From assembly GCA_002269645.1 (NCBI GenBank), contig NIVC01000436.1:372001-436000 (forward strand): DNA of 64,000 nt, given 5' to 3'. Position 1 is the stretch's first letter, and each line of letters begins with the position of its first letter. Below the pieces are notes generated by a model that saw only the letters and a list, made by a program, of their open reading frames with translations, was not told where the DNA came from and searched no databases. Shown piece by piece: positions 1 through 45,888 of this stretch. The DNA is from Macrostomum lignano (taxonomy: Eukaryota). A program made the position numbers and the translations under genes.

Positions 1-99
1 GAATCTTAAAACTTGATCCCTGATTCTGGGGGACTCAGCGCTCCCTAAATCTTGATACTTTAGATCCTTGAATATTGAGAAATAACAGAGATTTTTAAT

Positions 100-762
100 C
101 TAACCTGCGCCACGATTAGCAAATGCTTTAGTATAGGGATTAACGCTCATTCCGCCAACATTAACCCCAACACTGCCAGAGGATTGCACAGCGTTGGACC
201 CCGTCATAACAACGGCATCAGTTTGCAACTGTCGATCGCATTTAAGCATTTTTCTACGTGCCAATTCGCCTTCAAGATGCCGACTGACTGCGCGCAATCG
301 TTTGATTTTTGATTTATGTATTTGAGCAAGGCGCTCGGCCTCCTCGGCGCCACGAAGTGGCCGCGCCAGAGCGCGAAGCTCGGCAATTAAGCCTACGTGC
401 TCCGGCTGAAGAAGCGGATGGGCCACAGAGCCGGCGCTAGAGCCATCAACACCGATAGCAGCTGCAACTGCTTCACCATTGCATTGGACAGAATCTTTGT
501 TGCTGTGCTTGTCATTGCTACTATTATTACTACTAGTAGTAGTGTGCATAGTATCATGTCTTGAAACGCTATCAATGTGATTAGTTGTTTTTTTATTAAA
601 ATCATTATCACTATTTAGAACTGTTTGTTGCAGTGTCGCTGTTGCTAGTGAAGATGTCGATGTTGATGGCAATGCCATGGACACTGAGCTAGTGGTATGG
701 CCACCAACTTCAGCTGCTGGGTCAGGGTGCTGCAATTTTAAACCAAAATTCATAGTTTTCAC
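100..762 (-). CDS. Uncharacterised ORF: Ser/Thr/Asn low-complexity N-half and predicted coiled-coil C-half. Probably an exon or a relic of a longer coding region.
   Basis: 220-codon open frame. The C-half (LIAELRALARPLRGAEEAERLAQIHKSKIKRLRAVSRHLEGELARRK) looks like an amphipathic helix with GC-rich codons. The track start is GTG; the first ATG is at 753. No family recognised. Confidence 0.45.
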   Translation of the reverse strand: MKTMNFGLKLQHPDPAAEVGGHTTSSVSMALPSTSTSSLATATLQQTVLNSDNDFNKKTTNHIDSVSRHDTMHTTTSSNNSSNDKHSNKDSVQCNGEAVAAAIGVDGSSAGSVAHPLLQPEHVGLIAELRALARPLRGAEEAERLAQIHKSKIKRLRAVSRHLEGELARRKMLKCDRQLQTDAVVMTGSNAVQSSGSVGVNVGGMSVNPYTKAFANRGAG

Positions 763-2716
763 AATTTCCTTCTCCTTTTTTATTCATTTGGTTTTTTGGA
801 TTTTCCTTTCCCTTGTTGTCTATTTTTCATATTTTTATTAATTTTACTCATTTTCTATTATCATGCTTTTGTCCTATACATCCAAAATAACTTTTGATAC
901 TTGGTTATGATTAGTTTTTTCAACATATCTAATTTGGCTAGCTAGAATAGCTAGGTATTATGTATTCATTTATATTTGACATTGTTATTTTGAAATCATT
1001 TGGACATAGGCGTTTAAGTACTTATTAGTTAGTATAAAATTCTTATAATCATTAATCAATCACACCTATACATACATTAGTAAATTGGTATATACATAGA
1101 TACTACTTGGTCTAGCAAATATCTAGATAATAGCTTGGTACTTTAATATAAATCTAGTATATATCTAATCTAGTGACTAAAAACAATATGCACATAGGGT
1201 AACTAAAGTACAAGGTAATATGCTAGCATTTTTTATTACTACTAAACTAGATGCTTTAGAATTCTTTTCTTATTAGGTTTTTGCCAATAATAGATTCTTG
1301 CTATATAGATAAATAGTTTGATAACTGCCATAAAGATAAATGCCTTAGGCCTAATATACTTCATTAATGCTAATAATAATAATGACCAAGTTTGTCCTCT
1401 TATTATTACCTATAAAATTTGGCACTTGGGGCTTTATAGCTAGTTGAAATGGCTTTTAGAATTGGCCTTATGGTCAATATGCTCAAAAATAAAATATTTG
1501 TACTTACTATTTTAATTAATATCTTGAATGACTTAGCCTACTACAATACAAATATCAATTTATTATATTTTGCTAGCCATTAGTAGCAAATTAATAGGTC
1601 ATGATCTAGGCTAAAGGCTATTATATATATATAACATAGCATTCCTAGTTTATATTGGCCATGCAACCTAGTTTTAACAAAAATATAGCAAGTGGCTCAC
1701 TTTATTAACTAATAGATTAATTTAATGATCTATATTTGCCAAAACTCCAAAACTCTATCTAATTTGAATTATAAGACCATTTAATTTATTCTGGAAATTT
1801 ATTTTAAGGTCTAATCCTAGCTACCATAGGTATTCATAGATATAGTTTAGACATGAGATATCAATTTTATTATATCCTATTCTATATGATCCATTATAAT
1901 TAGGGACCTAGGTGAGGTTCCTATCCCATAACGTTATAATATATATGCAAAAGACAAATTTCAATGAAAGTAGATTTTTTGCAAATTAAAAACTTTGATA
2001 TAAAATAAAAATTTTAGTTTAAAATAGTTTTGTAATTATTTTTGTGAATAATAATATCAAGTTATATTATTTTAATATTATTAATAATTGCAAATACTTT
2101 TTTAATCTGCCAACATTCAATAATAATATTTATGCTCAATTTGTGATTTTCTTTAAACTCAAAATTTATATTTACCTTTGTTTCAATCATGTGTTTTAAA
2201 ATTAATATTGACTATATTCCAACATAGTATAAATAGATACAACCTAGCAGCCTAGCTAATAAGCTAATTAAACTTTTCTTTTCTTTTATAATTTTCTATA
2301 CTAAAAAACTTAGATAGAATAAGAATGCTAATAGTTAGGCCCTATCTAAGCAAATTAAGCTTAATCTAAATATACTAAATCTTCTATACTATAACTATAT
2401 CAATATATGGTAGTTTTAGATATATAGTATAGGCTCTACTTGCACTCATTTTGTTGTTTTCTATGACTATTTGTCCTTTTGCACTCATTTTTTTCTATTT
2501 TTGTTTTAAAAATTTTCACCTGGTACTCATTGACTCATTTTGTCTCTACCCTTACTTGTGCCTAAGCCACCCTCACTCATTTGCTCTCTTGCTGCCTTGC
2601 ATCAGTTTTCTACCCTTCCATGCATGCTAATTATCTCTGCCATGGCATTCTAGCTAGGCACTGTGCATTGGGTTGCACTTTGCTTTCTTTCTCTTTTTTC
2701 TTAATTGTCTGTTGGC

Positions 2717-3118
2717 TAGAGGTCGGATAGGATCCTAATCCCAATCCCAAAATCTCGGGATCCCAAGGAAAATTGAATTCCTGTAGGACCAGAATCCCAA
2801 CCCAAAAAAACTTGAGATTTGGGAATAGGTCTTTTGATTAATAATTTATAGAATTAGTGATTACTTGAAGGTATTTTGCTTTAACTTATACTCGTTACAT
2901 TATTTACTTTTTTGGTTACAAAACTTCATATCAATTTTGTTGTGTTTTACGTCTTGATCTTGACAATATTTTCTCAATTTTGTTTAACTTTATATGGACA
3001 ATACACTAAAAGACCTGATCCCAATTCCCAAATCCCAATCCTAATCCCGAGAAAAAAATTATTCCCGATCCCAATCCTGCCCCGGCTGCCTGAAGATTTC
3101 AATCCCGTCCGACCTCTA
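2717..3118. mobile_element. Non-autonomous hAT-type MITE (402 bp)
   Basis: Perfect 11-bp TIRs TAGAGGTCGGA (2717-2727) and TCCGACCTCTA (3108-3118). Perfect 8-bp TSD CTGTTGGC (2709-2716 and 3119-3126). Subterminal ATCCCAATCC repeats. An 8-bp TSD is diagnostic of the hAT superfamily. Confidence 0.85.
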
Positions 3119-4470
3119 CTGTTGGCTTAGAGTTGCTACTACTTTTTATATCAATATTTACTAGGCCAAGCCTATATAAGAGTTGCAAGCTAGGCCCCTA
3201 ATTGCTTTACCATTAGAACTGTTTTGGACTAAATGCTAAAATAAACTATTTTAGCAGACAAACTTTATTTTAGTAGACAAACTATTGCCTCTAAATAACA
3301 ACTAAAATAAACAAGAGTAGACAAATACAGTCATTGTAGATATAGACCTATAGCAAAAAGCAAATCATTTATGACTATGTCAATAGCAAAGCGTCTCAAG
3401 TTTGGTGGCAACAAGGCCAAATAGATATTTTTATTGTGTAAGAGTCTAGTCAAATATATAAGGAGGCCAACTAGGTAGGGGCCTAGCTAGTAAGCTAGTC
3501 CTAGTTGATACCAATATACCAATAAAGCTTGAATGTGTGCATGTGCATAGGTCCTACTAGAGTACTGTGGTGTCGATATATTAAGGCCCTAGGGCCTAGG
3601 CCCCTAACTATATTAGTCTGACTCAGACTGTCTGAGTAGGCCTATTATGTCTAAATGTACTTAGATACATTTAAGTATCTAAGCATTAAACAAGATACGT
3701 TTTTTTATTATTTAGGGTAAGGTCACCATCACATTCACGCTTTGGATTATTGGTTACATACGCAGGTTAATATTATAATGAAACGTGTAACCATGTCCAA
3801 TTGCCCATCGCGTAGTGTAGTTTATTGTTACTAATGATTGAAAAGCATAGCAGTCTGACTTAGCTAGGGGTAAGGGCCTATGAGGATTAAGACCGCGAAA
3901 AGTAGGCCCAAATGACGATGTAGTAAAGTAAATCCACATACTACAACTAAAATTTCTAACCAGAAAAAGAGAAATAGCAAAAACCTAGAAGTAATAGGTT
4001 TGTTCGTTCGCTAAACTATTAATTTGCTTTCTTTTAGATTATTTTGACAACCAAAGCGTCTTTTGAAACTCAATAAAACTTTTAATTAACTTCAACAGGG
4101 TTGTAACTAATTAACAACTTATCTACCATTTTACTTTTACCTAGAAAAAACAGAACAAAGGAAGTCTGTACAGCTCAGAGTCGAAGACCTTGGAGACTAG
4201 ATCTTTGTTGCACATAATTACGAGGTTTTTGAAGTACAACAAAATTAAAGTGTTTTTTGTAAATTAAAAAATAAGCGCTGTTAATTATGCCTTAAATTAT
4301 ATAAAACGTATTATTCCAGTAATTTTTTTTAATGAAAGCTTAATTCTTAAATCACAAACCAGCATCTCTATGCTACTATTGAAACTCGATTAATTTCAAC
4401 TGAAACAAGTAAATGTCCATTTTTCATTTATCGAGTACACGCATTTTATGATTGGATCCGGCGTTAAACC

Positions 4471-7400
4471 ATGGCGACAGAAAACAAAGCTTCCGACAAG
4501 GAAGAACTGATTGATTTAAACGAGAGATTTCACTTTTACGTTCGTCGTGTACGCCAGCTTCGTGATGAATCCGATTTGGAAACATTTTACAAGTCTATTG
4601 CCACTCTTGAAGATGAAGTAAAAGAGGTTCGCAAGTCCTACGAATCAGAAATCTCCAAACTAAAGTAAGAATTTAGTTTGGGTCACTATTATTTAACCTG
4701 TTTAGGTCACTAAAGCAAATAGTAGTAGTTTAGTTGTCACATTGGTATCAAATAGTTCTTACTTCATTCCATCAAGCGAAGTTTTTTTTACTTTAGCGAG
4801 ATTCATTCATCGTCTTTCATCGAGTTATGATATTTTGCACGCGTGCGCGTGGTAAGTTAGTATAAGTAGTATCTAACAGTAGTGGATTTAAGATGGAATT
4901 AAAGGGATTTAGATGGATTTAGAGCTCCCTTTGAGTTAGCTTTTATATTTTTTAAGTTGGGTATTTTATATTTATATGAATAAAAAATCAAAAGCAAAGA
5001 TAACCTTAGTAATTTTGGATCAGGAGGTAATTATACATGTATGGTATCAAAATTTGAGATGTTTATGGTAATAATTACAGTACTGAGTACTTAAAAGAAA
5101 GAAAATACATGTGTACCACTCGAAATCTTTTTTTAGTAAAAAATATTGCGGAAAATACTAGAAATTTTAATCGCAATAATAATAATAAGTTTTGAAAGTA
5201 TTCAACCGAACTTCAAAATCTGTATCTCTAAGCTATGAACCGCTGTCAATTTTTTCTTTCATACATACAGTAGCTATATTTACGCATATGATTATTTTGC
5301 CTGGAACTAAACAAAAAGTTTGCTACTCAAATTCTTAATAGCAGAAAAATAATTTAGTAACAAAATCTGAAACCAAAAATGTTTCAGGTATGCCATCGAG
5401 ATCCTCAATCGAGAGAAGTCAGAGATGGAGAAAGACATTATTGCTCGCAAGAACATGGAAGCACATCTAAATGATCGGTAAATGTTGGTTTTATGTTCAT
5501 TGTTTGGAGCGAATTAGGTCTGTAACTTATACGTAGCTATCTTCCAACCAATAAACCCGTGATTTTAGCTTGAACGTGGAGGTGGACAAGACTCAGCGCT
5601 ACGTGACAGAGATCAGCCAGTTGAAAAATGAAATCGTCGACAAAGACTATCAAATTCGCGAGCTGAATATGAATCTTAACCAGGCCCAATACGACAACAG
5701 CGGGATGAAGAAAGACTTGGAAACAAAGACTAGACTGGCTGAGGACTTGAAGCGACAGTGAGTCGACTATTTTGAAATTTATTTTCAGTCGAAAGGAAAT
5801 ATAATTGCAAACATTACAATGTCTAAATTTTGTAGACTTGATCTAAGCAAAAGCGAGTACAAAGACACCACCAATCGTCTGCAGATTGTGGAAGAGAAAC
5901 TTTCTTTTCAGGAATCATTCACAGAAGAAGTGAGTAAAGCATGTTGACAAATAAATTTAAGCTTCAAATGATGTTGAGAAAGTTGAACTTAACCTACAGT
6001 ATGCTAATAGACTATGACTTCTCCCGTAATCATTAGAAGGCATGGAACTAAGCTTTGTGAGTATCTGGGTAAAGTTCAATATTTATAAAGTCGTGACTAT
6101 AATGACCAGGAGAGGGTAGAGTCCGAGCTCCGCCATGACCAGGAGAGGGTAGAGTCCGAGCTCCGCCATGACTAGGAGACTGTAGAGTCCGAGCTCCGCC
6201 ATGACCAGGAGAGGGTAGAGCTCCGCCATGACTAGGAGACTGTAGAGTCCGAGCTCCGCCATGACCAGGAGAGGGTAGAGCTCCGCCATGACTAGGAGAC
6301 TGTAGAGTCCGAGCTCCGCCATGACCAGGAGAGGGTAGAGTCCGAGCTCCGCCATGAACAGGAGAGAGGGTAGAGTCCGAGCTCCGCCATGACCAGGAGA
6401 GGGTAGAGCTCCGCCATGACTAGGAGACTGTAGAGTCCGAGCTCCGCCATGACCAGGAGAGGGTAGAGTCCGAGCTCCGCCATGAACAGGAGAGAGGGTA
6501 GAGTCCGAGCTCCGCCATGACCAGGAGAGAGGGTAGAGCCCGAGCTCCGCCATGACCAGGAGAGAGGGTAGAGTCCGAGCTCCGCCATGACCAGGAGAGA
6601 GGGTAGAGTCCGAGCTCCGCCATGACCAGGAGAGAGGGTAGAGCCCGAGCTCCGCCATGACCAGGAGAGAGGGTAGAGTCCGAGCTCCGCCATCAAAGGC
6701 ATCCTTTAACAGTGACAAACTATAAATCACTAACGTATAACGACACCAATTGCAGCGCATGGGCGAGCTCAAGCGTCGAATCGAGACCTACCTGATGCAG
6801 ATTGCTGAGCTAGAAAACAAATGCGAACTGTCCGAAGCTCGAGAGGCCGCCTTCCCCGACCAGCTTCGCCAAGTGAAAGAGACGGCGGACGCCGATTTGC
6901 GCAAGTTTCAACGCGACACTGAGGAGTTCTACAAGGGCAGCATCCAGACGCTGCAGGAGCAGCTCGAGGAGGAGATTGGCGAGAACAAAAAACTGCAGGG
7001 CGAAGTTGAACGACTCAACGATAAGATTGTTGAGTACAGGAATCAGGTGAGAAATGCATTTGCAAGCATAGATGATTATTGGACCCCTTTGCGATTGGCT
7101 ATGCTAAAGCTCAGTTCATGTGGCACACATTTCCATTTGGACATTTTAATCACTAGCTCATCAATCGCAGGTTACGGAGCTGAAGTCTCAAATCACCATG
7201 CTGGAGCAGCAGAAGCGCGTTCTCAGCCAATCATTGGAGTCTGAACGTCACCAGAACACGTACGCAATCAGCGGACTCGAGCGCAAGCTCAAGGAGGTCC
7301 AACAGGAACTGCAGGCCAAGGTGACCGAGATGAACCAGAAACAGGACGTGAGCGCCTCGCTCCGGGCAGAGCTGGACGCGATGCGCGCTCTGATTGAGGA

Positions 7401-10400
7401 GGAGGAGACCCGGCTGGGAATCCGGATCAGGCCGGCTGCGCCCATCAACTATCCCGGAAGCGGTGGCAACGGCGGAGGCACTCAGCAGCAGCAGCAGTTG
7501 ACAACAGTTACAACTGTAGTTGAAGCTACCAGTACGTCGAAGACTGCCGAGACAACAACAGCCGTTGTTGCCTCAACTCAGGTGGCAGGTAAAACTGAAC
7601 AAACTAAAACCAAAACTTCGAACGCGGAGGCAACAAGCTCCTCAGAGGTGCAACACGACATTGCTGAGCAGAAGCGGCCGCAGTTGAAGCAGCGCGACTC
7701 GGACTGGCAGAAGATGAGGTTCCTCGCCGAGGAGACTCAGAAAGCTATGGCCAACAGCGGCGGCGGCGGCGGCTCGTCTGGCAGCTCGCAGGCCGGAGAG
7801 GAGGGCATGCAACTGGACCTGAACGAAGCGACTGCAGCGTCGGCCGACGAGGCGGTGTCGCCTAACGATGGCTACGACGAGCCGAAAACTCCGCGTGACA
7901 AAGTGGTCGGACCCGTGCTGGGCGGCAGTAGCAAGGGACCGGGCGTATCCAATGCCGTTGGACCTCTGGTTGGTGCTGGGGCGTCTGGCGACAAAGAAGC
8001 GACACCACCTAGGAGCGGGTCGAGTAAGTGCACTCTGTTTGCCTTACTCTGTTTAAACACCAATCTTATCTATCTCGCTTCGGATTGGCTTATCGTAGCA
8101 TCCTGACAGCTTCAGATGATCGTAAACGTGCTTTGACCTCTTCACCATGCACATGCATTTTCCTAATGATATCTTGCATTAATTAGTTCAATGAAACAAT
8201 GCCCCTTTCTAATTAGGAGGGAGTTCATTTTGCGATACGAATCATTTTGGAAAACTTCTCATAAACAGGCAAACGTCGCTCTGCACGCAACGAAGGCGAG
8301 GGTCGCGACTACTTCGAGGAGTTGTTCGAAGACATCGACGATCGGATGGAGGAGGCAGGCGCAATGCAGCCGCAGCCTCAGGATACGTCGGTCATGCAGT
8401 CCAGGTGAGTCAAGACTTTTAATTAAGGTTACCTAGCGAAATAAGAGACGAGATCCTGAGATGAAATAGAGTGAGGCGAAGTAACTGATAGCTAAGTATA
8501 TGATCAGGTGATTATTTAAAAAAAGTTAATATGCAACATGCATGACATAAAGCCGAAACCGCTGTGTTTACAACTGCCTCTAACACCCCGTCTACGAATA
8601 TAGGAACTGAAATTGAACTGGAGCATGTAAAAATTCGGTTTCTCAAATGTGTTTTCAATTCACGATTGTTCACTAAAGTTGGATCAACTAATGTTGTTCA
8701 TTTTCTGTTTTATTCAATAAGCTGCACAATTGCAGCTGCAGTACATCTCTAAAAGAAGCATTGAAAACTTTTTGCAGCGCCATCGGCGACATCAAGATTC
8801 TGGAGGTGAATCCGGAGGGAAAATTTGTTCGAGTTCTCAACTCCAATGAGAAAACGGTGAGAGATTGTAACATGTACTTAATGGACAACGTGGGGAACTC
8901 CTTCATTTGAGGAGAAATTCCCGGAACTGAATTCTGCATGCTCCCAGAGTTGAAAATCGAATTCATTCGGTCCCGTTCATTGGAGCTGGAATCCACTTTC
9001 TGTCCAGCCATTTACCAAACCGTTTAGCCTCTTTGTCCATCATCTTTTGCTGGCAGCTGTTATTTTGTCTCACATCCTACAGCAAGGGTCAACAAACTTT
9101 TTACCTCAAGGGCCGGATGAAGAAGTCAGCTCATGGCTATGGGCCAGTTGAGAGAAAAAAGGAGGGGAATAGAAGAGATAAGAAACAAAACAAGATGAGA
9201 AAACAGGGGAGAGACGAGAGAAGGAAGAGAAGAGAGAGGGGACAGGGGGAGAGGGAAGAGAGGAGAGGGAGATAGAGGGGAAAGAGGGGAGAGAGGAGAG
9301 AGGGAAATCTGGGAGAGAAGAGAGAAGGAGGAGAGAGGAGAGAGAGGGGAGAAGAGAGAGGGAGATAGAGGGAAGAGAGGAGAGGGAGATGGGAGATAGA
9401 AGGGAGAGAGGAGAGAAGAGAAGGGGAGAAGAGAGAGGGGAAGAGAGGAGAGAGGAGATAGAGGAGAGAGGGGAGAGAGGAGATAGAGGAGAGAGGCGAG
9501 AGAAGCTCTCTCTAGAGAGGGGAGTGGGGAGAGGGGTGAGGGGAGAGAGGGATAAGAGAGTGGGCAGTGGTGGGGAGCGGGGAGAGGAGATAGGAGAGAG
9601 AAGAGAAAAGACAAACATTAAGCGGGCCGGATTGCTATTGTGAAGTTTCAATGGACCTGAGGGCCGGATAGAGAAGCTTCGCGGGCCGCATGTGGACCGC
9701 GGACCGGAGTTGTCCGACCCCTGTGACCTACAGCAAGTCCTCTGGTAATGAGTTCAATCCCAATTCTGTATACCCTTACATCACCACTTCAACTACCAGG
9801 AGGCCGAGTTCGGCAACTTCGCGGTGCAGCAAAACATCGGCGGCCATCCGATCGCCGTGTTCCGCTTCCCGCCGCACACGAAAATCAAGCCGAACAGCAC
9901 GGCGACAATCTGGGCCGGCTGCAATCCGCCAACCGAAGCGTTGCACCAGCCGCCTACAGATTTCTATTGGCGAGAATATGACCGGTTCAATACGGGGCCG
10001 GAGTGCACTACGGTTGTGTGCGAGCCAAGCGGACGGGTGAGACTCTTGTTTCTCTGTGACCCTTCTGATTTCTTTTAAAACGGTTACTTTCAGCATGCCT
10101 ACATGCAACTATAATTTGTGCTTCAACCTCAAAGGCGGTTGTAGCCTAGAAAGGGGGTTGAAGCCAAGTGGTTACAACGTCAGACTCACGACTGAAACGT
10201 CGGGGGTTCGATTTTCGACCTACTCTGAAAAATTTGTGTCCTTAAGCAAGACACCTAACTCTGCATTGCTTCAGTTCACCCAGCTGTAAAATGGATGCCA
10301 GCATTAGCTGGGGTAATTGAAGATGTGTGCCCCCCCCTCGCTAAGTCCTTGGACTGAACAGCCGTACGCAGCCTTCAGATGCGCCGCGCAATAGCTGCGG

Positions 10401-13400
10401 CTGAGCTGTCAGTTGCTGGAACAAAAATTATATTATTTTTCAACCTCAAAACACTGACTTCACACCTTTAGAAAGATTGGGGGCAAGGGATCGAGGGGGT
10501 CCTTGTGGTAGCGCGTCTGATTATTTTACGCCGAAGTACCCTTTGACTCAGGCACGCAAGCACGATTTGGCATAAAAAAACCTTTATTATCAACTGCACC
10601 AGCTTCAGAAAAGTATGCGATTTGGACTTTGGACACGATCGTACGTCTCTCACTGAAACATGCGTCCCCGATTTTCCTCATATTACAGTCCATAGCCTGG
10701 ACCACGCCGTACCACCGCTACTCAAAGGACGCCTTTCTTATTGTCACGCCGACAGCCTCGCAGAAAACGTCGGCTAGAGACCCATCTGAGGACTTTGACG
10801 GCCTTGAGGGCGAGCCAAAACTGCCGCAGCATCGAACCCTGCCGCGAGAGGAGCCTGCAACCTTGAGGCGGTGAGTTTAGTGCTTTTGGAAACAAAATTT
10901 ATGACATTTAAAGACGACCTCATTTGGGACCTCATGTGCATGGGGCCTCTACTAAAATTGATAGAAATAAAAAATGATACACCATGTGAAGTTTAAAGGT
11001 GCAGAATTGCTGTCTCAAAACGTAATTTACTGACCTATATTCATAGTTTAATTGTACCCTACTTGCTCCCGCCTCAAAACACAGCGAGAAGACTATGCCC
11101 TGCTACGTGTCGTCGCGTCATCCACACGCCCAGCCAACCTGCAACAGCGTGCATCCGCGATGTGACTCGCCTCGCACCGGCCTGTGGGGCAACGATAATA
11201 GCTCAGTAAATAGGCAGTCGCGCTCGCAAATGACTCGAGTACCAGATCGAGTTCCTGGTGAGCGTATTTTTGGTTTTCATGACTCGTACATGTACTTCTT
11301 GCATTTTATATTGTATTGAATCACTGAATCAGTTACTTACGATGGGTTGATGTGGCGAGGGATCGTTTTTACAAGTTCGAAACTTCGTCGAACAGTCTTA
11401 TGGTAATTGTTACCTTCACTAGAGCAAAACTTCACAAGCTCGAAATTTCACTATAAACGAATTCTTTAAGATTGCGTGTATACTAGCGAAAGTTGCTCGC
11501 AGGGCTTTTTAATGATGTGAAGTCTCGACTCGAGCATATGAAACGCGACGCCCACGTTTTGGGTGACAAATTAAAAATGATCGATTTAAAAGTCTTCATT
11601 GATATTTTTTGTTTAGCTTATTGGCTTACATTTGACTAAAGAGGTAGAAAATATATTGGCTGTTTCTCCTATCCCTTGTGGAGAGTCTATAGCTATGGAG
11701 TTAATATTTTAAACTGCAGTTGCTAACCTGAAGACTTTAATTCTGCGTTTCTGCCTTTGCTTGAAGAGATCAACTAAAAATGGTATTGATAAAAATTATT
11801 TAACAGAGCGATTGTTGAATGCAATCTTATACCAGGTGAGCCGTACACTGGCAGCAGCAACCAGGTGATGGGCTTGGCCCGTGTCATGCACTATCAAGCC
11901 AGCCTTCGCAAAAGTGCCACTATTGGCAACAGAGCTGTAAGTGCATATTGTCTTTTTTTCAATTACTGATCGTCTTGAACTGAATGCAGTTACTACTACT
12001 GTAGATAGATCTATATAGGCCGAATTCGACGCTTAATTACTTACTGAAACATTAACAAACTAATCCATCAGCCCGTTTTGTTGGGTCAATCGTATCGTAT
12101 TACATGCGGACTTTTACCTTTTAACACCTATTAGCACTTTTATAATTGGGTGATTGGGTGTCCCAGAAGTAGTGCCACTTTTATGCGTGTAAAGGTGGTA
12201 CGTTACACCTTTCTTCTGTGCAAGCGTAGAATTACTGTATCGTGTATATATTTATATTTATATCTATATTTATATGGTCAAGGGTGCGCAAGCAAATGCC
12301 TAGAGCAGGAAGAATACATGCGAAAATCGGATTTTCTGTGCTTGAAAGCTAAAAAAGCTGCTTAGTCGGCCAATGCAAAAAGTAATTAACACTCACGTTC
12401 CTATACTAGTGGGGAAAGAAAATGGTGACACTTAAACTTTCATGACACCCCTCGTACAAATGTTAATATTTTATTAATTTACTTTAGCCAGTATAGTTAT
12501 TTACGACTCGTAGAGAGGCCTTCAATATTTTATAAGTTTTACTTCTACATGTACATGCAAAATTGTGTGTAATTATGTTCGTTCGCACACACGCACATTT
12601 GGGAGCCAGATGCATGATTGCCCTAATTTATATGTACATGCATGTACAAATCACGACGAAACGATCCAGGTTAGGTAATGGTTGGGAATTATTGCATTAT
12701 GCATGTTTGCGGTAATGTAATAATAAGCATATATTACTACAGTGTTTCTTAGGTACTGATATGTACAACAGGTGTGATTTTATTTAGCCCAACTTAAAGT
12801 CAATCATGCAATTAAATAAGTGAGCAATTTAATAAATTGATAGTAGATATAGTTTCTTGAAAATCGACAGTTAATTATTATTTCAAATTTTTTAAGCAAA
12901 AGCCTAAATCTTTTCAATAATATTTTCTTTAAAAAAATTACTTGTAGACTACAATTCCGCAAAAACGTTTATTATACCTTTAACACCACAACGACAAATT
13001 TATAACCATTAACATTTATGTAATGAAGTACTGGTGTCTTGCTGCTTCCCAATCAGTTGCGAGAGCTGCCTACCTTGAGCTCCTCTGGGAAGTCTCCAGG
13101 TTGATCTAGTAGCGTCGGTAGTGCTGCCACCAGCTTCGCAGAGTCGCAGCCTTCGGTGAGGTGCTGAGCTCGTAGAAGCAAATAATTAAGACGAGAGAAA
13201 GAGACTCGCACTCCGTGCAGATTTAGCAGTTCTCGCGCAGAGGTGCCCACCGTCAGCAGTCCCTGCCGGGCTGGTGCGGGGTGAGAGCGAAAGTGCTAGC
13301 TTCGGGCGATCTGAGCTGGCCTGCTAGCTGATAGCAGGAACAATCAGAGCCAGAGGCAGTCACGCGCAAAGTCGGGAGTCTTGGAGTTCAACTTAAGCGC

Positions 13401-16400
13401 AAACTTGGCACACAAACTTAGAGGCTTGAACTGAGAAAATCTCGGGCTCGAAAACAGGAGAGAAAGCCGGTTAACGGAAGGAAAGAAAGGCTTGTCTGAG
13501 CCAAGCCAGGAGAGGGGCTGCATTTATAGGGAGGATCGATTGCACCATAGCACGAAAGGCCCCCGCTGAGAGTCATAAGTGACTCTGTTGCTATTTTTAG
13601 CAACAAACAAGCGGGCCCTGCCTCAGAGGAGGCAAGGGGGGTCCGGGCGCACGTGATCTCCCATAAACACGAGCCCAGCGTACAATGATGAAATCATTGC
13701 ACTTTGGACTAAAGAAGGAAGAGGGCCTTGTCATGTGACTGACTCACATGACAAGGGGAAAAGGCCCACAAGTGAAGGCACTCGTGACCGTGGGACCGGA
13801 AAACAGGAAGGCACTCCAAATTTGGAGATGCCTGACAGAGAACGAAACAGAGGCAGGCCAGACCAAGCTGTCTGGGCACTGCAAAAAGGGAAAGCGAGAC
13901 AAAAGGGGCAAACGAGGACAAACAGACAGACAGACAAACGGGCAGAGGACAGGCCAGGGACAGGCGGGAGGGACAGGCAACTGCCCAGCGGCAGACAGAA
14001 ACCAGGGGAGAAGGCGAGGGCAACAGCTGACTAGTGCGGCGCCTAACTAAACTAGCGACTCACTACACTCTCCCCGTTCAAATAAAGAGGCGGAGTGAAG
14101 CGGCGCGCGCTTTATTTAAAACAAAGTAAACGTGAATTTACTGACAAAAGAAAACACACAAAATTTCAAATGCGCTCGTGAAATTGCGCGACTGGCCAGG
14201 TCGTAAAGATAGTGGCCTGATACCGCGGGGGCGCCAACCCGCTAATAGCCTGCGCCTAACTATTCCTCGTGCTCCAGCCCGCAAAATTAGTGCTCGAATT
14301 TGGTGTGGGGGCGCCGGCCCACCCTAGAAATGGCGCCTAAATATTGCGCGGGCGATACCTGAATACACAAGCCAACCGGCTTAAAATTCCTGCATAAGGG
14401 CGCTTAACTAGCGCGGCAAACGGGGCAGCTTCATTGTCAACAGGGCGTACATCAGCGTACGGCCGCCAATCAGTCAAAATAGCACAGACGCGGAGTCATC
14501 AAGAGCATCGGCAGGTCTTCTTCCCCGCCGCCCATGAATCGGGCAACGCGGACGGCCGCCAGGTGGAGAGCGTACGGCCGGTTCGGCCGCTCCAGGTCGG
14601 GGCCGGCCAGGCCGACCGCCTCCGCGAATAACCGGCTCCTCTCCTCGGCCGTGGTTTGACGGAGCTCCGCCCAGATCGGGCCACCGAGGTCAACGATTTC
14701 TCCGCCTTGCCGAGCCGCTCTGACGAGTACAGCGCTTATCAGGTTGGCGCCGGCAGCGATGACGGTAGCTCGGTATTCCGGTATTGGCGACTCCGTTTGA
14801 GTGCCGGTATCGAGCGTTTCCGCCGGACGTTCGGGCGATGGTGGCGGGGCCCTGGACAGGGTGCGGCGCAGCGACGCGGCCAGGTCGGTCCAAACAGCTG
14901 AGGAGCATGCGGCCGCTCCCTGAGTGTCATCGGTCCAAGACATCGGAGACGGGGCCGCGTCGGGATGCCTGGCGTCGTCGAGATCCCCTCCGCGTTCATC
15001 TGTTCCGCCGGGCCTGCCGTGGTGCTCCGACCCGACTCGCTCACGGGCCGCCGGCCGAGCCCCGTCGATGTCTGGAAGGGAATTGCGGACTTGGAGGCGG
15101 ATGTCCGCCAAGCCCCGCATCACCTGCTGTTCCAGCTGCACGTAAGCCAAAGCGGCCGCGATCCGGTCGACCATGAGTGTCCGCGCAGTCGCGTCTGGCG
15201 ATGGCGAGTCGCGCGTGAGGTCGATGACTTCGGGCGAGTGTCGTTGACCCCGAGCGGGGTGTTGAGCTGCATGGCTCTCCAGAACGGGCGAAGGGCTTCG
15301 CCTGGGTGCCGATGTTCGGAGTGGCCTCCCATTCCGCCTCTGGGGCTCGGGGGACGGCGTGCGACGGTGATGGCGCCGATCAACCTGGCGCGTCGGCCTC
15401 GCCGAGCCGTTGCCTTCAGCCCTGAGTCTCCGGTTAATTGTCTCCAGCGGGCGCCGCGGGATCCCCATGGTCTCTGGCGAGACCGGGGTACCAGGTCGGC
15501 GCCGGCTACGGCTAGGCCGCCCTTGCTCCGCATCGGACGAGGAGCTTGAGCTCACGTGGAGCGGACGCTTGTGCATTTCTGCGCTGCAAGGTTTTAATTT
15601 GTGCACACGCATGCGGGCGGTGCGACTAACGTACGTTTTGGCCCTAGGATCGCTAATCAGAAGCCTCTCGGCGGCCTCCGATCCCTAACTGGCCTACCTA
15701 CCACTACTGGTATAGGAGACGCTTCCACCGGAGTGGTGCAAGAAGGTGGCGCAGGAGACTGCGCCGCAGAAAAAGGTTCGGGAAGGGGGGACGCGTGGGC
15801 AGGTGAAAAAGAAGCAGCAGGTGCAGACGCATTCAAACCAGGCACACCATCATGGCGATCACCATACGGCAGTGGCTCACGCCGAAATGCACTTGCCTGG
15901 TTCGCTGGTGTCGTGACCGGTCCACCTCCTGGCTGCACATCCGGGATCGCCAACGGCCGGAAGCGCCACCGGAAGGCCGGCCATGCGTCATCATCATCAT
16001 CGTCCTCGTCGGATCGTCCTCCGGATCGGTGTCAGGGTCGCGGGTCCTGCACCGTCCGGGCATCAGTCGACCTGCGGCGTTTCTTGGCCTGGTCGACTTC
16101 TGGATCCGAAGTCAGCTGGTAGTCGGCATCAGGGACGAGTAGCAGATTCCGGCGATGGACTACTAGCTCGTCGCGCCTGGCCCGCGGGTTTGGCACTCTA
16201 CGGCGAATCTTGTAGACGACCTCGCCCTTGGGTTCGACTACCTCGTACAGCGCTTTGCGAGGTCGATGGAACTTCGCCGCTTCATCCGGTTCGAGCACCG
16301 GGTTGTTGAGGAAAACCAGGTCACCAGGTTGGAGCTTCTTGGCAGCGGGCAGGTTCGAATAGTGCTCGTCGCGCAGTTGCTGATGCAGATGCAGGCGTTC

Positions 16401-19400
16401 TTTGGCTAGCTCAGTCGCTTCGTCCAAACGGCGCTGGAAGTCCTTGACATAGTCAGGCAGATTGGCATACTCCGGCAGCTTCTTGATCGCGTTGTCGATT
16501 GGTAGTCGAAAGTCTCGACCAAACACCAGGTAGTGAGGCGTGAAACCTGTCACCGGGTGTACACTAGAGCGGAGCGCCATCAAGCAGGCTGGGAGGAAGG
16601 TGTCCCAGTCGTTATGGTTGCGCTCGAGGAGGCAGGTGAGGACACTCTTCAGCTGCTTGTTGAGGTTCTCGACTTGCCCATTAGAAGCTGGGTTGTACGG
16701 TGTTGTCGTCGTATGCCGGATGCCAAACAGGTCGCAGAACTTCTTGAAAGCTGAGCCAGTGAAATTGGTTCCTTGATCAGTGTGTATCCAGCATGGTACA
16801 CCAAAGTCAGGGATCAAGCGCTCCTGCAGGATCTTGATGACCGTCTTGGCTTTCTGGTTCCTCATCGGATAGGCGAACGGGTACTTCGACGTCGCGTCGC
16901 ATAGCGTCAAGATGTAGCGGTTCCCGCTCTTGCTCTTCTGGGCGATAGGGCCTACTACATCGCAATGTACTCTTCCCAGGACTTCGCACACAGGGAAGCT
17001 CTGTACAGGTACTCGGTCTCGTCTTCGGGATTTACTTTCAAGACAGGCGCGGCACTTACTGATAAAGTTCTCGGTGACACGGGCTAGTCCGGGCCTCCAG
17101 AATCGTTCACGTAGCCGCTTCAACGTCTTCGTCTGGCCGAGGTGTCCACACAGTGGCGAACTGTGGAGCTCCTGGAGCACCTGGGCATCTAGAGCTTCGG
17201 GCAGGACAACCTTCGGGGCTGCTGGCCATCAGTCAGATCGATCATCAGCAGGCCGTTGTCCTCTCGCAGATTATCATAATATCCGAGCAGATTCCGCTGC
17301 TCCTTCGTCAGTCGCAACCGGGCGTCGAACTCAGGCTTCAGGGCTTTGTTCTCGACCAAGTTGAGCACGTAGCTGATTGCTCGGTCGGCGCGCTGCGCGT
17401 CGACAAACTGTTGCCGCGTCATCGGCATCCTCATAAAATCAGTGAGCACGGCGCGGCATGGCTGAGGGTTCCGGATTTCCTCAGTCTCCGCTTCTGTGGC
17501 TCGCAGTTGATCACGCGACTCCGTCTTGTCGGCGTCAGGATTAGGTCGCTCCGAGGGACTTTGTCTCACAACGTCGGCGTACGATCGCTGATCTCGTTTC
17601 GAAGTTCTCATCGTCGCTCTCTTGACAGGAATTTCCGCAGCTGGAGCAGTGCACTTGCCTCCACTGCACAGCCCAGGCGACTCTTGGCTGTAGGGCGAGA
17701 CGCAACACGTGAAGCACGCCTCGTCGCAGGCAGCCGTAGCCGTCGGCTCGATCATCGTCGTCATTGGGTGAGTCTTCTCCAGCACTGGGCGGTGTCGCAA
17801 AGGGGGACTCGACTTTCCGCACAGGCGATGAGCAGCTGTCTGTCGGCTCGGGGGACAGAGCGTTGACCTTGCAGCCGTCGCGAGAGTCTGGCCTCTGTCA
17901 ACACGGCGAGAACTCTCAGCGCAAAACTCCGGGGAGTTGAACTTACATTGCTGGTCTGGATTCGCGTTGTGGGCTGTCATCAGAAGGGCTGCTTGTTCAG
18001 TGGCCTCTGAGTCGTGGTCCATGGGCGTCTCCAGATTCCGAGACCCGCAGTCTTGGACATCATCAAGGAGGTCTACGTCAGCAGTGGCCTCCGAGGTTTT
18101 GTCCGGGCGAATCTCCAAGTAACGGCAGTCGGCGTGGGCGTCGCTGCGGAGGGCTGAGGTGTCAGTGGCCTCCGGGTTGGTGTCCAAACCGGTCTCCAGG
18201 CGTTGACTGCAGCGATGGTCGTCGTGCTGAAGGACTGCTGGCGCAGTGGCCTCCAGGTCTTCGGCCAGGGCAGTTTCGGCCTCCTTGTTGCGAGTGTGGA
18301 CCTTCTTCGTGCGGGCTGCTCTCGCAGTGGCCTCACGTGTGGTGTCCAATTCCGGCTCCAGGCTGGTGTCATCACCGGGTCGGGCTGCAGAACCGGGGTG
18401 CTCCAGCAGTCGGCCATGTTCGAAGTCAACCGGTGGTGTCTCCGGGCGTCTTGACAGGGCGTCAGCGTTGGCGTGGTCCTTGCCTTTGCGATGGTGAAGC
18501 TGGAAGCGGAACTCGCTTAATCGCTCAATCCAACGGCCCAAGATGCCTGTGACCTGCGTCTGGTTCAGCAGCCACAGCAAGGCCCGATGGTCAGAACGAA
18601 CTTCAAACTTTTGCCGATTAAATAATGACGGAAATGTCGCATCGCGTCCACGATTGCAAGCAGCTCTTTCTTCGTGACCGTGTAGCGCTTCTCAGGATCA
18701 CGAAGCTTCCGGCTAAAGAATGCAATTGGGCGCTCGACGCCGTCGGATTGCCGTTGTCCAAGACAAGCGCCTATGCGAATGTCTGAGGCATCCGTGTCTA
18801 GGACAAACTTCACATTAGGATCTGAGTTAAACTCAGGCAGAGCGAGAACTTCAGTCGAACACAACTTCTTCTTCAACGTGTCGAACGCTACCTGGTGCTC
18901 ATCAGTCCAATGCTGCCGCAGGCTGCCGATGTCCTTTCGAGTCAGGGCATGTAGCGGCGCAGCAAATCCAGCGTAGCCGTTGACAAACTTGTGGTAGTAA
19001 TTGGCGAGGCCTAGGAATTGTCTCAGTTGAGTAACGGACTGTGGCACGGGCCAATCACGGATCTGCGCAATCTTGTCCTCACAGGTCTTCAGGCCGTCGG
19101 GAGTCACGACGTGGCCTAGATAATGCAGCTCCTTGAGGAACAAATGGCACTTCTTCGGCTTGACCTTGAGGTTGGCTGCGATAATCCGCTGGAGTACAGT
19201 CCGCAGGTTGTCCAGCTGCTCCTCGAAGGTCACAGAGTGCACCACGATGTCATCCATGTAGCCAAGCGCAGTCTTTGGCGTCAGGCCGTCCAGGAGCTTA
19301 TTGATGCAACGCTGAAAGCTGCCTGGACTATCGTGGAGACCCATCGGTAGAACATTGAAACAGAATTGTCCGCGGTCAATCACAGAGAACGCCGTCAGGT

Positions 19401-42362: not shown

Positions 42363-43055
42363 CACACTCAGTGAGAACTGACCTCCTATCATTCACTGTC
42401 TACTCTCTCTTTTATCTTTGTTTCTCTTTGGTCTTTCACCCCCAAAAATATTTTCGTCAGTTGTTGACCAGCAGCGGTAGATCGACGAGGCGCGCTCATA
42501 ATTAAAAGCGATCCCGAAAAGTCTATACGAAAGGAAATGTGCTGGGCCCTGTAATTTTATTAGCCAGCTATGTCGGTTTTCTGTGCATGATAATTGCTGT
42601 AATTATAGATAACAAAGTAGGCTCAGATGAGCGCCATGCAATATGTATCCGATGCTTTGATTTTTATCTAGATTGGAAATTTTCGGCTTCTTAGATTTTT
42701 AGGATGCATCGGGAGTATAAGACGATATTCGAGCATAGCAGCTCGAGTTCGGTTATCACCTACCGGGGAAATTTAATTGATTTCGAGTTGGCGCCGTCGC
42801 TATTCGAATTTCAACAAAAATTCTTCTTCAACTGAGAGAGAAATTGGAAGTGATCGTTGCTTTGAGGGCCAACGGCCGGCCGCAACGGTCGAGGTCACCT
42901 TGCGTGACGACTAATTTTCTTGGAAACTTGATCGCCTCTCAACTGAGATTTGATCTGCAGCCACTGCGCGTCTCTGCTGGTCTCCGCAGCATTCGGGTTG
43001 TTGGTTCAACTCCTCTGCCTTGCCTCCCTACCTGTGTTACAGCTGTGTCTGTCTA

Positions 43056-45503
<2,448 letters not shown>

Positions 45504-45888
45504 GTATCAAATGCTCCTGAAATTAAATAACTCATTTTTTCTGCATAGAAATCAAAGAAAAAATGCTGAAACAATGGGGGTTCCGGCCAGCCCAGGCCGC
45601 AGCTGGTGGCAAGCGAGTTAATCCAAACCCTATCAGGGTGAAATGACCCTTGTACGAATGCATTATAAATCACTGCTTGCACTATACTAATTTTTTTGTA
45701 TCGGCTGATTGTGAAAATGTGGCGCGACTTTTTATTAGAATAAATCTATAAATTAGCCGGGCTATTCGTGTCTAATTCCCACACTTGGTTGAGGCTTTTT
45801 AATTCGAAATCCATTCTCTGATAGTGGCGACGTAGTTTTGCTTAATTTCCCAGACAAATTAATTTCCGGATTAGGCGCTAAAAGAAAC

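What the first reader, a model, noticed from the sequence alone, without database searches (positions are those of the whole stretch)
480..3720. Sharp CpG-void, TpA/CTAG-rich domain resembling RIP-like C-to-T hypermutation
Manual count gives only 2 CpG in 781-2716 and 3 in 3119-3720, while the rest of the window, including AT-rich introns, has abundant CpG. Normal CpG density returns abruptly near 3745. CTAG/TAG/CTA are strikingly frequent even in moderately GC-rich stretches (GGCCCTAGGGCCTAGGCCCCTA at ~3585). CCGG-to-CTAG needs transitions on both strands. Plain CpG methyl-deamination stops after the first hit, so a TpA excess points to CpA being hit too, as in fungal RIP. A localised mutational or methylation domain of this kind in an animal genome would be notable. 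Alternatives are an old methylated TE relic or a methylated gene body.
Basis: partly seen in the sequence, partly recalled or inferred. Interest (0 to 1): 0.7.

Follow-up and report, generated by a model that had tools for sequence, protein, structure and literature searches.

The report
CpG-free intergenic spacer in a flatworm
A 3-kb stretch between two genes of the flatworm Macrostomum has lost nearly all its CG sites and, in places, its CAG/CTG sites and keeps losing them, which is what a small germ-line-methylated patch would look like in an animal whose methylation map is still unknown.

Summary
Window 781-2716 has 2 CpG (34 expected) and 3119-3720 has 3 (18 expected), while neighbouring AT-rich non-coding DNA has CpG o/e about 1. 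The window is from Macrostomum, a flatworm. The domain is the spacer between two divergent genes: an unnamed ORF (100-762, minus strand) and a lamin-like gene (ATG at 4471).

A second, diverged copy of the locus in M. lignano (L001) is also CpG-void, with the same borders. In the aligned part of the domain, no CG and no CAG/CTG is shared between the copies. In the flanks these sites are conserved like any other. The loss is therefore local, context-specific and continuing.

It is not fungal-type RIP. There is no general CpA effect, the standard RIP substrate index is 1.19, and equally duplicated flanks are untouched.

Part of the CTAG/TpA/GpC excess has a separate cause: lineage-specific micro-insertions that turn TA into TA-GGCC-TA, found almost only inside the domain.

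Best reading (about 0.5): a small patch that is chronically methylated in the germ line at CG and partly at CAG, and decays by deamination. M. lignano retains DNMT1 and DNMT3. No methylation data were available, and there was no outgroup to polarise the changes.

The parts
100..762 (-). ORF of 220 aa with no Pfam family. It is the flanking gene on the left, homologous to M. lignano BOX15_Mlig007330g2. Its 5' part (about 455-762) is already CpG-poor.
   Evidence: 94% identity to P0001; no Pfam match. CpG is 3 against 10.7 expected in 480-780. L001 thins at the matching place.
781..2440 (.). Core of the domain: 25% GC, void of CG and of CAG/CTG.
   Evidence: CG 2 against 25.0 expected; CWG 4 against 18.9. 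The C share at YpG is 0.027 and at YAG 0.032, against 0.30 at other Y positions. It aligns to L001 9965-7796 at 88% and then 80% identity.
2441..2716 (.). T/C-rich sub-block that is CpG-void but has normal CAG/CTG.
   Evidence: CG 0 against 9.5 expected; CWG 6 against 5.8.
2717..3118 (.). hAT-like MITE inserted into the domain later. Its CpG is not depleted.
   Evidence: Perfect 11-bp terminal inverted repeat TAGAGGTCGGA. Perfect 8-bp target duplication CTGTTGGC at 2709-2716 and 3119-3126. CG 9 against 12.3 expected.
3119..3737 (.). Right part of the domain: CpG-void, dense in TA-G(n)C(m)-TA motifs, with only mild CAG/CTG loss. It is the fastest-diverging part.
   Evidence: CG 3 against 18.3 expected; CWG 9 against 11.9. 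Only 65-73% identity in short colinear anchors to L001. First flanking CpG is at 3738.
1346..1353 (.). TAGGCCTA, a micro-insertion specific to the window copy. L001 has a plain TA at this site.
   Evidence: Clean 6-bp indel: GCCT[TAGGCC]TAAT against GCCTTAAT.
3476..3644 (.). Cluster of TA-G(2-4)C(2-4)-TA motifs, starting at 3476, 3590, 3597 and 3637. Further single sites lie at 2336 and 3191.
   Evidence: Seven of the window's 9 such motifs lie in 781-3760.
4471..8106 (+). Lamin-like intermediate-filament gene, the flanking gene on the right. Start codon at 4471, several exons. The gene runs on beyond 8106.
   Evidence: ORFs. The homologous gene called in L001 carries PF00038 Filament and PF00932 LTD. 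Its upstream region and introns have normal CpG.

Best explanation
The domain is the roughly 3-kb spacer between two divergently oriented Macrostomum genes. I propose that it has long been cytosine-methylated in the germ line, in a genome that is otherwise almost unmethylated.

**Mechanism (inferred).** Methylated cytosines deaminate to thymine. This happens at CG throughout the domain, in both copies. It also happens at CAG, with the paired CTG hit less often, in patches: strongly in the window copy (781-2440) and in L001 7795-7041. CG and CAG/CTG are therefore removed about as fast as mutation creates them. TG/CA, TAG/CTA and TTG/CAA accumulate, with CTAG as the end product of CCGG, CCAG and CTGG.

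**A second process** adds to the TpA, CTAG, GGCC and GpC excess. Short insertions convert TA into TA-G(2-4)C(2-4)-TA. The simplest reading is that these are excision footprints of a cut-and-paste transposon that duplicates TA. They could also be end-processing at TA breaks.

**Shown:**
- the composition of the domain;
- its borders;
- that a diverged copy shares the state;
- the context-specific turnover of CG and CAG/CTG;
- the insertional origin of TAGGCCTA.

**Inferred:**
- that the changes run from C to T;
- that methylation is the cause;
- that it acts in the germ line;
- that the micro-insertions are footprints.
For: 1. **A diverged copy shares the state.** L001 is a second copy of the locus in M. 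lignano. Outside one inserted element it has only 4 CpG in about 3.1 kb of spacer. Its borders map within about 60-100 bp of the window's.
2. **The loss is continuing.**
   - A context-free simulation expects 13.2 +/- 3.5 new CpG in the aligned left block since the copies split. One is seen.
   - There are 0 C/T differences at 91 YpG sites, against 7-10% in other contexts.
   - The fast-diverging right half is still void in both copies.
3. **The effect is domain-specific.**
   - Conservation between copies in the domain: CG 0/4, CAG 0/8 and CTG 0/14, against 57% for other trinucleotides.
   - In the flanks CG is conserved 66%, and CAG and CTG 50% each, against 60-70% for other words.
   - CWG cytosines differ at 12 of 12 sites, against 66 of 277 for CHH (Fisher 8e-8). 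In the flanks the figures are 4/32 against 38/254.
4. **Size of the effect.** The share of C at YpG is 0.04 against 0.35 elsewhere. That corresponds to a C-to-T rate about 14 times higher at CG. From my own knowledge, this is the range seen for methylated CpG in vertebrates.
5. **Asymmetry between the copies over all 5.5 kb aligned.** L keeps C where W has T at CG 22 times against 5 the other way (p 0.0015), and at CAG 16 against 4 (p 0.012). There is no asymmetry at CTG (4 v 5) or CHH (90 v 79). CAG is hit four times as often as the paired CTG. From my own knowledge, this matches a CAG-preferring de novo methyltransferase.
6. **The enzymes exist.** M. lignano is reported to retain DNMT1 and DNMT3 and to have low overall 5mC. 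The genomic pattern is said to be unknown (PMC11292947, PMC9246332, PMC10658182).
7. **The L001 insert.** The 563-bp insert found only in L001 has CpG 6 against 19 expected. This fits decay after insertion.
8. **The micro-insertions.**
   - There are two clean 6-bp indels turning TA into TAGGCCTA, one in each lineage, and four more at 2175 and at the right border.
   - They make up 6 of 26 indels in the domain and 0 of 20 in the flanks.
   - TA..TA flanks 44-60% of GG/CC clusters inside the domain, against 0-0.8% outside.
Against: - **No methylation data.** No reads could be consulted.
- **No outgroup.** The direction of change (C to T) is inferred from context specificity, not observed.
- **TpG/CpA is not in excess.** In the domain o/e is 0.97-1.00, against 1.05 in controls. 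Simple CpG decay should raise it.
- **The window's MITE is not depleted** (CpG 9 against 12.3 expected). So either it is young or the process does not act on it.
- **CAG/CTG loss is patchy and differs between copies.** L001 9965-8899 has 13 against 14.2 expected.
- **The simulation assumes a reversible mutation spectrum.** A strong GC-to-AT bias would lower the expected CpG gain, by my own rough estimate to about 8-9; this lower figure was not simulated.
- **Precedent is lacking.** From my own knowledge, a sharply bounded, intergenic, 3-kb methylated island is not the usual invertebrate pattern, which is gene bodies.
- **The footprint reading lacks a source.** No element with matching termini is present in the 84 kb examined.
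- **Possible artefact.** The window-specific CG-to-TG and CAG-to-TAG excess could in principle be a base-calling artefact at modified bases.
Confidence: 0.5

Rival explanations
1. Selection on composition. The spacer is a regulatory or structural element, for example a shared promoter or enhancer, a matrix-attachment region, or a cluster of sites for a factor that binds the palindrome TAGGCCTA. It must stay free of CG and CAG/CTG, and it gains binding sites.
For: The position between two divergent genes and the borders are conserved in both copies. The palindromic 8-mer is enriched several hundred-fold: 11 in the L001 spacer against about 0.03 expected by my own estimate from base composition (not computed by a tool), and none elsewhere in L001.
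Against: - The domain diverges at least as fast as introns and flanks: 88%, then 80%, then 65-73% identity, against 87-90%.
- CTAG is conserved no better than other 4-mers (18/29, against 49%).
- GGCC is conserved worse (2/10).
- The motif arises by 6-bp insertion, not by point changes.
- Purging every CG across 3 kb of otherwise free-drifting sequence by selection is implausible.
Confidence: 0.12
2. Inherited composition. The domain is a relic of an old transposon or of foreign DNA that was already poor in CG and rich in CTAG when it arrived. Nothing special acts on it now.
For: The borders are sharp. There is no coding capacity left. Transposons have landed in it in both copies.
Against: - This does not explain why almost no CpG has arisen in 12-35% of divergence.
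- It does not explain why no CAG/CTG is shared between copies while they are conserved normally in the flanks.
- There are no protein-domain remnants and no second copy in 84 kb.
Confidence: 0.1
3. RIP-like repeat-induced point mutation. A deaminase-type process recognises duplicated DNA and mutates C to T, mainly at CpA, before meiosis.
For: - TAG/CTA is in excess.
- CCAG/CTGG against CTAG differences are seen between the copies.
- Segment 3119-3720 on its own passes the usual RIP indices (TpA/ApT 1.59; substrate index 0.93).
- A second copy of the locus exists.
Against: - There is no general CpA preference.
- The substrate index for the whole domain is 1.19, and the flank 3745-4470 also has a positive composite index.
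- The flanks, introns and coding sequence are duplicated just as much and keep CpG o/e about 1.
- CG is the main target.
- The state is chronic and shared, not a burst.
- From my own knowledge, no RIP machinery is known in animals.
Confidence: 0.06
4. Assembly or base-calling artefact at modified bases.
For: The window copy shows an excess of T where L001 has C at CG (22 v 5) and at CAG (16 v 4), across the whole aligned locus. Systematic miscalls at modified cytosines could produce this.
Against: The CpG-void state is present in two different sequences, one from the public M. lignano assembly GCA_002269645.1. Flanking CpG is called normally in both copies. An artefact of this kind would itself imply that modified cytosines are present.
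Confidence: 0.04

Closest known systems
Methylation-driven CpG decay in mosaic animal methylomes (CpG-poor methylated compartments beside CpG-normal unmethylated DNA)
   Same: CpG o/e is 0.06-0.10 next to DNA with o/e about 1. The implied excess C-to-T rate at CG is about 14-fold. The state is stable over evolutionary time. DNMT1 and DNMT3 are reported in the species.
   Different: The domain is intergenic rather than a gene body, only about 3 kb long, and sharply bounded. There is no TpG/CpA excess. CAG/CTG is lost as well. Methylation itself was not measured.
Non-CG (CAG-preferring) methylation by DNMT3-type enzymes, and CG+CHG methylation of plant heterochromatin
   Same: Loss affects CG plus CAG/CTG but not other CH contexts. 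TAG/CTA and TTG/CAA are enriched as the expected products.
   Different: The CAG cytosine is hit about four times as often as the CTG cytosine (16 v 4). That fits an asymmetric de novo enzyme rather than symmetric plant CMT3-type maintenance. From my own knowledge, chromomethylases are not known in animals. The effect is patchy and differs between the two copies.
Fungal RIP and RIP-like hypermutation (Neurospora CpA; TCG in some basidiomycetes)
   Same: Local, context-dependent transitions of the C-to-T type raise TpA and lower GC. A duplicated locus is involved.
   Different: The context is CG and CAG, not CpA. The standard indices are not met for the domain as a whole. Duplicated flanks are spared. 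The state is chronic rather than burst-like. The organism is an animal.
Excision footprints of TA-duplicating cut-and-paste transposons (Tc1/mariner/pogo type)
   Same: TA on both sides of a few constant nucleotides. The indels are clean, specific to one lineage, and sit at former TA sites. The length of the central remnant varies.
   Different: No element with GG...CC termini was found. The density is very high (about 1 per 100 bp in L001 6370-7460). The motifs are confined to this domain.

Membership tests
Fungal-type RIP | C-to-T mutation with CpA preference: TpA/ApT high and (CpA+TpG)/(ApC+GpT) below about 1.03 | tested here: not met
   For the domain the indices are 1.16 and 1.19. Differences per C are 0.17 at YAA, 0.43 at YAT and 0.43 at YTT. 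Only YAG stands out.
Fungal-type RIP | Acts on duplicated DNA as such | tested here: not met
   The flanks, introns and coding sequence are duplicated along with the domain but keep CpG o/e about 1 and normal conservation of CG and CAG.
Fungal-type RIP | RID/DIM-2-type machinery present | not testable with these tools
   No access to the proteome of the genome.
Germ-line methylated, CpG-decaying domain | Strong local CpG deficit with unmethylated-looking neighbours | tested here: met
   CpG is 5 against 52 expected in the domain, and 19/18.5 and 21/21.4 in the flanks.
Germ-line methylated, CpG-decaying domain | Excess turnover at CG relative to other cytosines in comparisons of related copies | tested here: met
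   No CG is conserved (0/4). There are 0 of 91 YpG differences. 13.2 new CpG are expected and 1 is seen. In the flanks CG is conserved 66% against 70% for other dinucleotides. Direction is not polarised.
Germ-line methylated, CpG-decaying domain | Excess of the decay products TpG/CpA | tested here: not met
   o/e is 0.97-1.00 in the domain against 1.05 in controls.
Germ-line methylated, CpG-decaying domain | 5-methylcytosine actually present in germ cells | not testable with these tools
   No read or methylation data. The literature reports only low global 5mC and the presence of DNMT1 and DNMT3 (PMC11292947, PMC9246332).
CHG/CAG non-CG methylation signature | Depletion of CAG/CTG with enrichment of TAG/CTA and TTG/CAA | tested here: met
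   CAG/CTG o/e is 0.51 (W) and 0.80 (L) against 1.26. CTA/TAG is 2.04 and 1.83 against 0.82. The first-order o/e of CAA/TTG is 1.38 and 1.21 against 0.97. The window core has 4 CWG against 18.9 expected. The effect is patchy.
CHG/CAG non-CG methylation signature | Symmetric hit on both strands (plant CMT3 type) | tested here: not met
   Sites lost in the window copy: CAG 16 against CTG 4.
TA-duplicating transposon excision footprint | TA-x-TA structure arising as an insertion at a former single TA | tested here: met
   W 1346: GCCT[TAGGCC]TAAT against GCCTTAAT. At about W 951, L001 has AGCTAGGCCTAGGT against AGCTAGGT.
TA-duplicating transposon excision footprint | The central nucleotides match the termini of an identifiable element | tested here: not met
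   No TA|GG...CC|TA pair with terminal inverted repeats above chance level in the window or L001. Only 84 kb were searched.
hAT-type MITE (window 2717-3118) | 8-bp target duplication and terminal inverted repeats beginning YARNG | tested here: met
   CTGTTGGC is present on both sides. The 11-bp perfect terminal inverted repeat is TAGAGGTCGGA.

The most novel reading that the evidence does not exclude
A free-living flatworm confines cytosine methylation, or another cytosine-directed mutator, to small intergenic islands. There it acts on CG and on CAG. This would be an animal counterpart of the CG+CHG heterochromatin marking of plants and fungi. The same islands are hot spots for a TA-specific break-and-rejoin or transposon process that writes TA-GGCC-TA palindromes. 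The locus would then be a sequence-level signpost to where the still unmapped Macrostomum methylome lies.
Probability: 0.2. Interest if true: 0.8.

Novelty: new variant of a known kind. Interest (0 to 1): 0.55.

Why it matters

This locus gives a concrete, testable prediction. It names coordinates, borders and sequence contexts (CG, CAG) where germ-line methylation should be found. It also gives a simple compositional signature for scanning the whole genome.

If confirmed, methylation in this animal would be targeted to discrete intergenic islands rather than gene bodies, and would include a non-CG context. That bears on how methylation targeting evolved in Spiralia.

The TA-GGCC-TA micro-insertions are a separate and cheap-to-test puzzle about DNA breakage, repair or transposition in the same islands.

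Tried and rejected
**Searches for more copies, which failed.**
- Two protein searches with the lamin-like gene, meant to fetch further copies or an outgroup, returned nothing.
- Five exact-product look-ups with window ORFs found nothing.
- Only one related locus (L001) was therefore available, and substitutions could not be polarised.

**Searches for what the domain might encode or derive from.**
- Six-frame translation of the core against Pfam gave no family.
- Rfam on 1-6000 gave nothing above chance.
- Searching the domain against the rest of the window and L001 gave no other copy.

**Other tests that led nowhere.**
- Scan for a transposon with TA|GG...CC|TA termini: only chance-level pairs.
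- The two LTRs of the resident retroelement as a mutation-spectrum control: 0 mismatches, so uninformative.
- The CpG-free 22-mer satellite as a second example of the process: rejected, because a sister array carries a homogenised CpG variant in 16 of 50 units, so CpG is tolerated there.
- Full-text search for TAGGCCTA: only primers and oligonucleotides.
- Wasik et al. 2015, the only cited source of M. lignano bisulfite data, is not in the held library.

**Readings considered and dropped.**
- Gene-body methylation: the domain lies between two start codons and has no ORF.
- Organelle insert or viral insert: no coding remnants.
- Transcription-strand asymmetry: C/T and G/A differences are 35 and 35.


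Full report
**What is there**

Window 781-2716 holds 2 CpG where base composition predicts 33.9. Window 3119-3720 holds 3 where 18.3 are predicted. The 402 bases between them (2717-3118) are a later insertion: a hAT-like MITE with a perfect 8-bp target duplication (CTGTTGGC), an 11-bp perfect terminal inverted repeat, and near-normal CpG.

Neighbouring non-coding DNA of similar AT content has CpG o/e about 1. The flank 3745-4470 has 19 against 18.5 expected, the intron 4669-5570 has 21 against 21.4, and 6.9 kb elsewhere has 236 against 231.

The other features also hold. CTAG occurs 31 times against 6.6 expected and GGCC 13 against 1.1. TpA o/e is 1.15 against 0.89 in controls, and GpC o/e is 1.87. 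The only other CpG-void stretches in the window are plain tandem arrays.

**Where it is**

The minus-strand ORF at 100-762 is 94% identical to a hypothetical protein of Macrostomum lignano. So the window is from this free-living flatworm or a very close relative.

The gene that starts at 4471 on the plus strand is a lamin-like intermediate-filament gene. Its counterpart in the related locus carries the Filament and LTD domains.

The domain is therefore the spacer between two divergently oriented genes. It is not an intron or a gene body. It has no ORF of note, no Pfam remnant in any frame, no Rfam match and no second copy in the 84 kb I could read.

**A second copy shares the state**

The only related locus I could fetch is L001, from M. 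lignano assembly GCA_002269645.1. It is colinear with window 1-8773. Identity by block is as follows.

| Block | Identity |
|---|---|
| Left ORF | 95% |
| Left part of the domain | 88% |
| Middle of the domain | 80% |
| Right part of the domain | 65-73%, short anchors only |
| Right flank | 87% |
| Lamin introns | 90% |
| 3' part of the lamin gene | 97.8% |

Outside one inserted element, the L001 spacer has 4 CpG in about 3.1 kb. Its borders map within about 60-100 bp of the window's. The void is thus older than the divergence of the copies, or is maintained in both. It is not a private event of one sequence or one assembly.

**The loss is continuing and is specific to the domain**

- A context-free simulation, using the divergence and spectrum seen in the aligned left block, expects 13.2 +/- 3.5 newly created CpG in the two lineages. 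One is present.
- At pyrimidines followed by a conserved G there are 0 C/T differences in 91 sites, against 7-10% in the other three contexts.
- Between the copies no CG (0/4), CAG (0/8) or CTG (0/14) is conserved inside the domain, while other trinucleotides are conserved 57% of the time. In the flanks CG is conserved 66% and CAG and CTG 50% each, like everything else.
- Counted per cytosine, all 12 CWG cytosine sites differ, against 66 of 277 for other non-CG cytosines (Fisher 8e-8). In the flanks the figures are 4/32 against 38/254.
- The share of C at YpG positions is 0.04, against 0.35 elsewhere. That corresponds to a C-to-T rate at CG about 14 times higher.

The simulation assumes a reversible spectrum. 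A strong GC-to-AT bias would, by my own rough estimate (not simulated), lower its expectation to about 8-9. That still leaves the deficit clear.

**The second context is CAG/CTG, not CpA**

After the CG-containing words, CAG/CTG is the most depleted trinucleotide: o/e 0.51 in the window and 0.80 in L001, against 1.26 in controls. CTA/TAG is among the most enriched, at 2.04 and 1.83 against 0.82. CAA/TTG is enriched as well.

The effect is patchy.

| Segment | CWG observed / expected |
|---|---|
| Window core 781-2440 | 4 / 18.9 |
| Window 2441-2716 | 6 / 5.8 |
| Window 3119-3720 | 9 / 11.9 |
| L001 counterpart of the core's left part (9965-8899) | 13 / 14.2 |
| L001 7795-7041 | 4 / 13.2 |

Other CpA contexts behave like CpT contexts.

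Over all 5.5 kb aligned, L001 keeps C where the window has T far more often than the reverse at CG (22 v 5, p 0.0015) and at CAG (16 v 4, p 0.012). This is not so at CTG (4 v 5) or other cytosines (90 v 79). Because the asymmetry is context-specific, loss in the window lineage is much more likely than gain in the other lineage. Without an outgroup this is still an inference.

Many of these differences are CTAG against CTGG or CCAG.

**A separate insertional process**

The palindrome TAGGCCTA occurs 11 times in L001, all of them in the spacer. My own estimate from base composition (not computed by a tool) is that about 0.03 would be expected there.

The wider pattern TA-G(2-4)C(2-4)-TA occurs 15 times in L001, all in the spacer. 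In the window 7 of 9 occurrences lie in the domain. Inside the domain 44-60% of all GG/CC clusters are flanked by TA on both sides, against 0-0.8% outside.

The flanks of the motif are unrelated from site to site. In the aligned parts the motif appears as a clean indel specific to one lineage, at a former single TA.
- The window has GCCT[TAGGCC]TAAT where L001 has GCCTTAAT.
- L001 has AGCTAGGCCTAGGT where the window has AGCTAGGT.
- Four more events lie at 2175 and at the right border.

Six of 26 indels in the domain are of this kind, and none of 20 in the flanks are.

Duplication of TA around a few constant bases is what excision of a TA-targeting cut-and-paste transposon leaves behind; that is established knowledge of Tc1/mariner-type elements. 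However, I found no element with matching ends, so this reading stays tentative. These insertions explain much of the GGCC and GpC excess and part of the CTAG and TpA excess. All the cytosines in them sit in CHH contexts, so they are immune to the CG/CAG loss.

**Mechanism**

The best-supported reading is that the spacer is a small island that is methylated in the germ line, at CG everywhere and at CAG in patches, and decays by deamination of 5-methylcytosine.

M. lignano is reported to retain DNMT1 and DNMT3 and to have low global 5mC. The genomic pattern is described as unknown (PMC11292947, PMC9246332, PMC10658182). I could not read the primary bisulfite paper.

Points against this reading:
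- TpG/CpA is not in excess.
- The window's MITE is not depleted.
- A sharply bounded intergenic island is not the usual invertebrate pattern.
- Methylation itself is unmeasured.

I put this explanation at about 0.5.

**Why not RIP**

The standard indices for the domain are TpA/ApT 1.16 and (CpA+TpG)/(ApC+GpT) 1.19. Only 3119-3720 passes on its own, and an ordinary flank also has a positive composite index. The extra context is CAG only. The equally duplicated flanks are spared. The state is chronic and shared.

The family assignment is not.

**Other rivals**

- Selection on composition or on TAGGCCTA as a binding site is unlikely. The domain drifts at least as fast as introns, CTAG is no better conserved than other 4-mers, and GGCC is conserved worse.
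- Inherited composition of an old relic does not explain the continued exclusion of CG and CAG/CTG.
- An assembly artefact cannot explain a state seen in two sequences whose flanks are called normally. It could contribute to the window-specific CG and CAG asymmetry.

**Verdict**

This is a real and unusual local compositional domain with two superimposed processes. It is most likely a new variant of methylation-driven cytosine decay, in an animal whose methylome is unmapped. The evidence is from one locus in two copies. It is compositional and comparative only, and it is directly testable.

Noticed in passing
window 13024-23099: LTR retrotransposon of the Ty3/gypsy type on the minus strand, with reverse transcriptase, RNase H and integrase ORFs. 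Its two 1.04-kb LTRs (13024-14067 and 22054-23099) differ by 0 mismatches and 2 gaps, so the insertion is very recent. CpG o/e inside it is about 1. Only pieces were examined; the element was not printed or assembled.
   Followed up: partly
window 2717-3118: hAT-like MITE with a perfect 8-bp target duplication (CTGTTGGC) and an 11-bp perfect terminal inverted repeat (TAGAGGTCGGA). It is full of GATCCCAATCC-like internal repeats. Joining the flanks gives the empty site.
   Followed up: yes
window 25500-52500: An unusually dense run of unrelated minisatellites with periods of 12-45 bp. The same ~20-22-bp unit (TAGTAGCTTTGGAGTGAGTCTA) lies in one orientation at 26547-28495 and in the opposite orientation at 29147-30151 and 31094-31428. 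There is also a 2.5-kb (TCTA)n at 43048-45508.
   Followed up: partly
window 6689-8773 vs L001 2066-1: The 3' part of the lamin-like gene, including non-coding sequence, is 97.8% identical between the two copies. The rest of the locus is 65-90% identical. This suggests gene conversion or recombination between the copies.
   Followed up: no
window 6102-6693; L001 about 2230-3960: A 33-35-bp minisatellite lies inside the lamin-like gene region. It is about 0.6 kb in the window and about 1.7 kb in L001.
   Followed up: no
window 1-5569 (all blocks aligned to L001): Outside the domain too, the window copy has T where L001 has C preferentially at CG and CAG. In the ORF 100-762 the counts are CG 8 v 1 and CWG 5 v 1. 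In the flank and introns CG is 11 v 4. Either weaker methylation-type decay spreads over the whole locus in the window lineage, or these are base-calling errors at modified cytosines.
   Followed up: partly
L001 8336-8898: A 563-bp insertion is present only in L001, flanked by ATAGTT on both sides. Its CpG is already reduced (6 against 19 expected) but CAG/CTG is not (17 against 12).
   Followed up: partly
window 3583-3605, 3191-3200; L001 6376-6445: Several of the TA-G(n)C(m)-TA inserts happen to spell whole TTAGGG or CCCTAA hexamers, which is the telomere repeat unit of flatworms according to my own knowledge. This may be coincidence, since TA followed by GGG gives the unit. It could also hint that G-runs were added to broken TA ends.
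   Followed up: no
window 36118-36912: ORF with a partial rhodopsin-family 7TM receptor domain (PF00001, E 1e-10). It is probably one exon of a GPCR gene.
   Followed up: no
L001 about 18900-20160: A tandem array in which almost every TA is part of a CTAG (14-21 CTAG per 250 bp). CpG is below expectation there (3-8 against about 16-18 expected per 250 bp).
   Followed up: no
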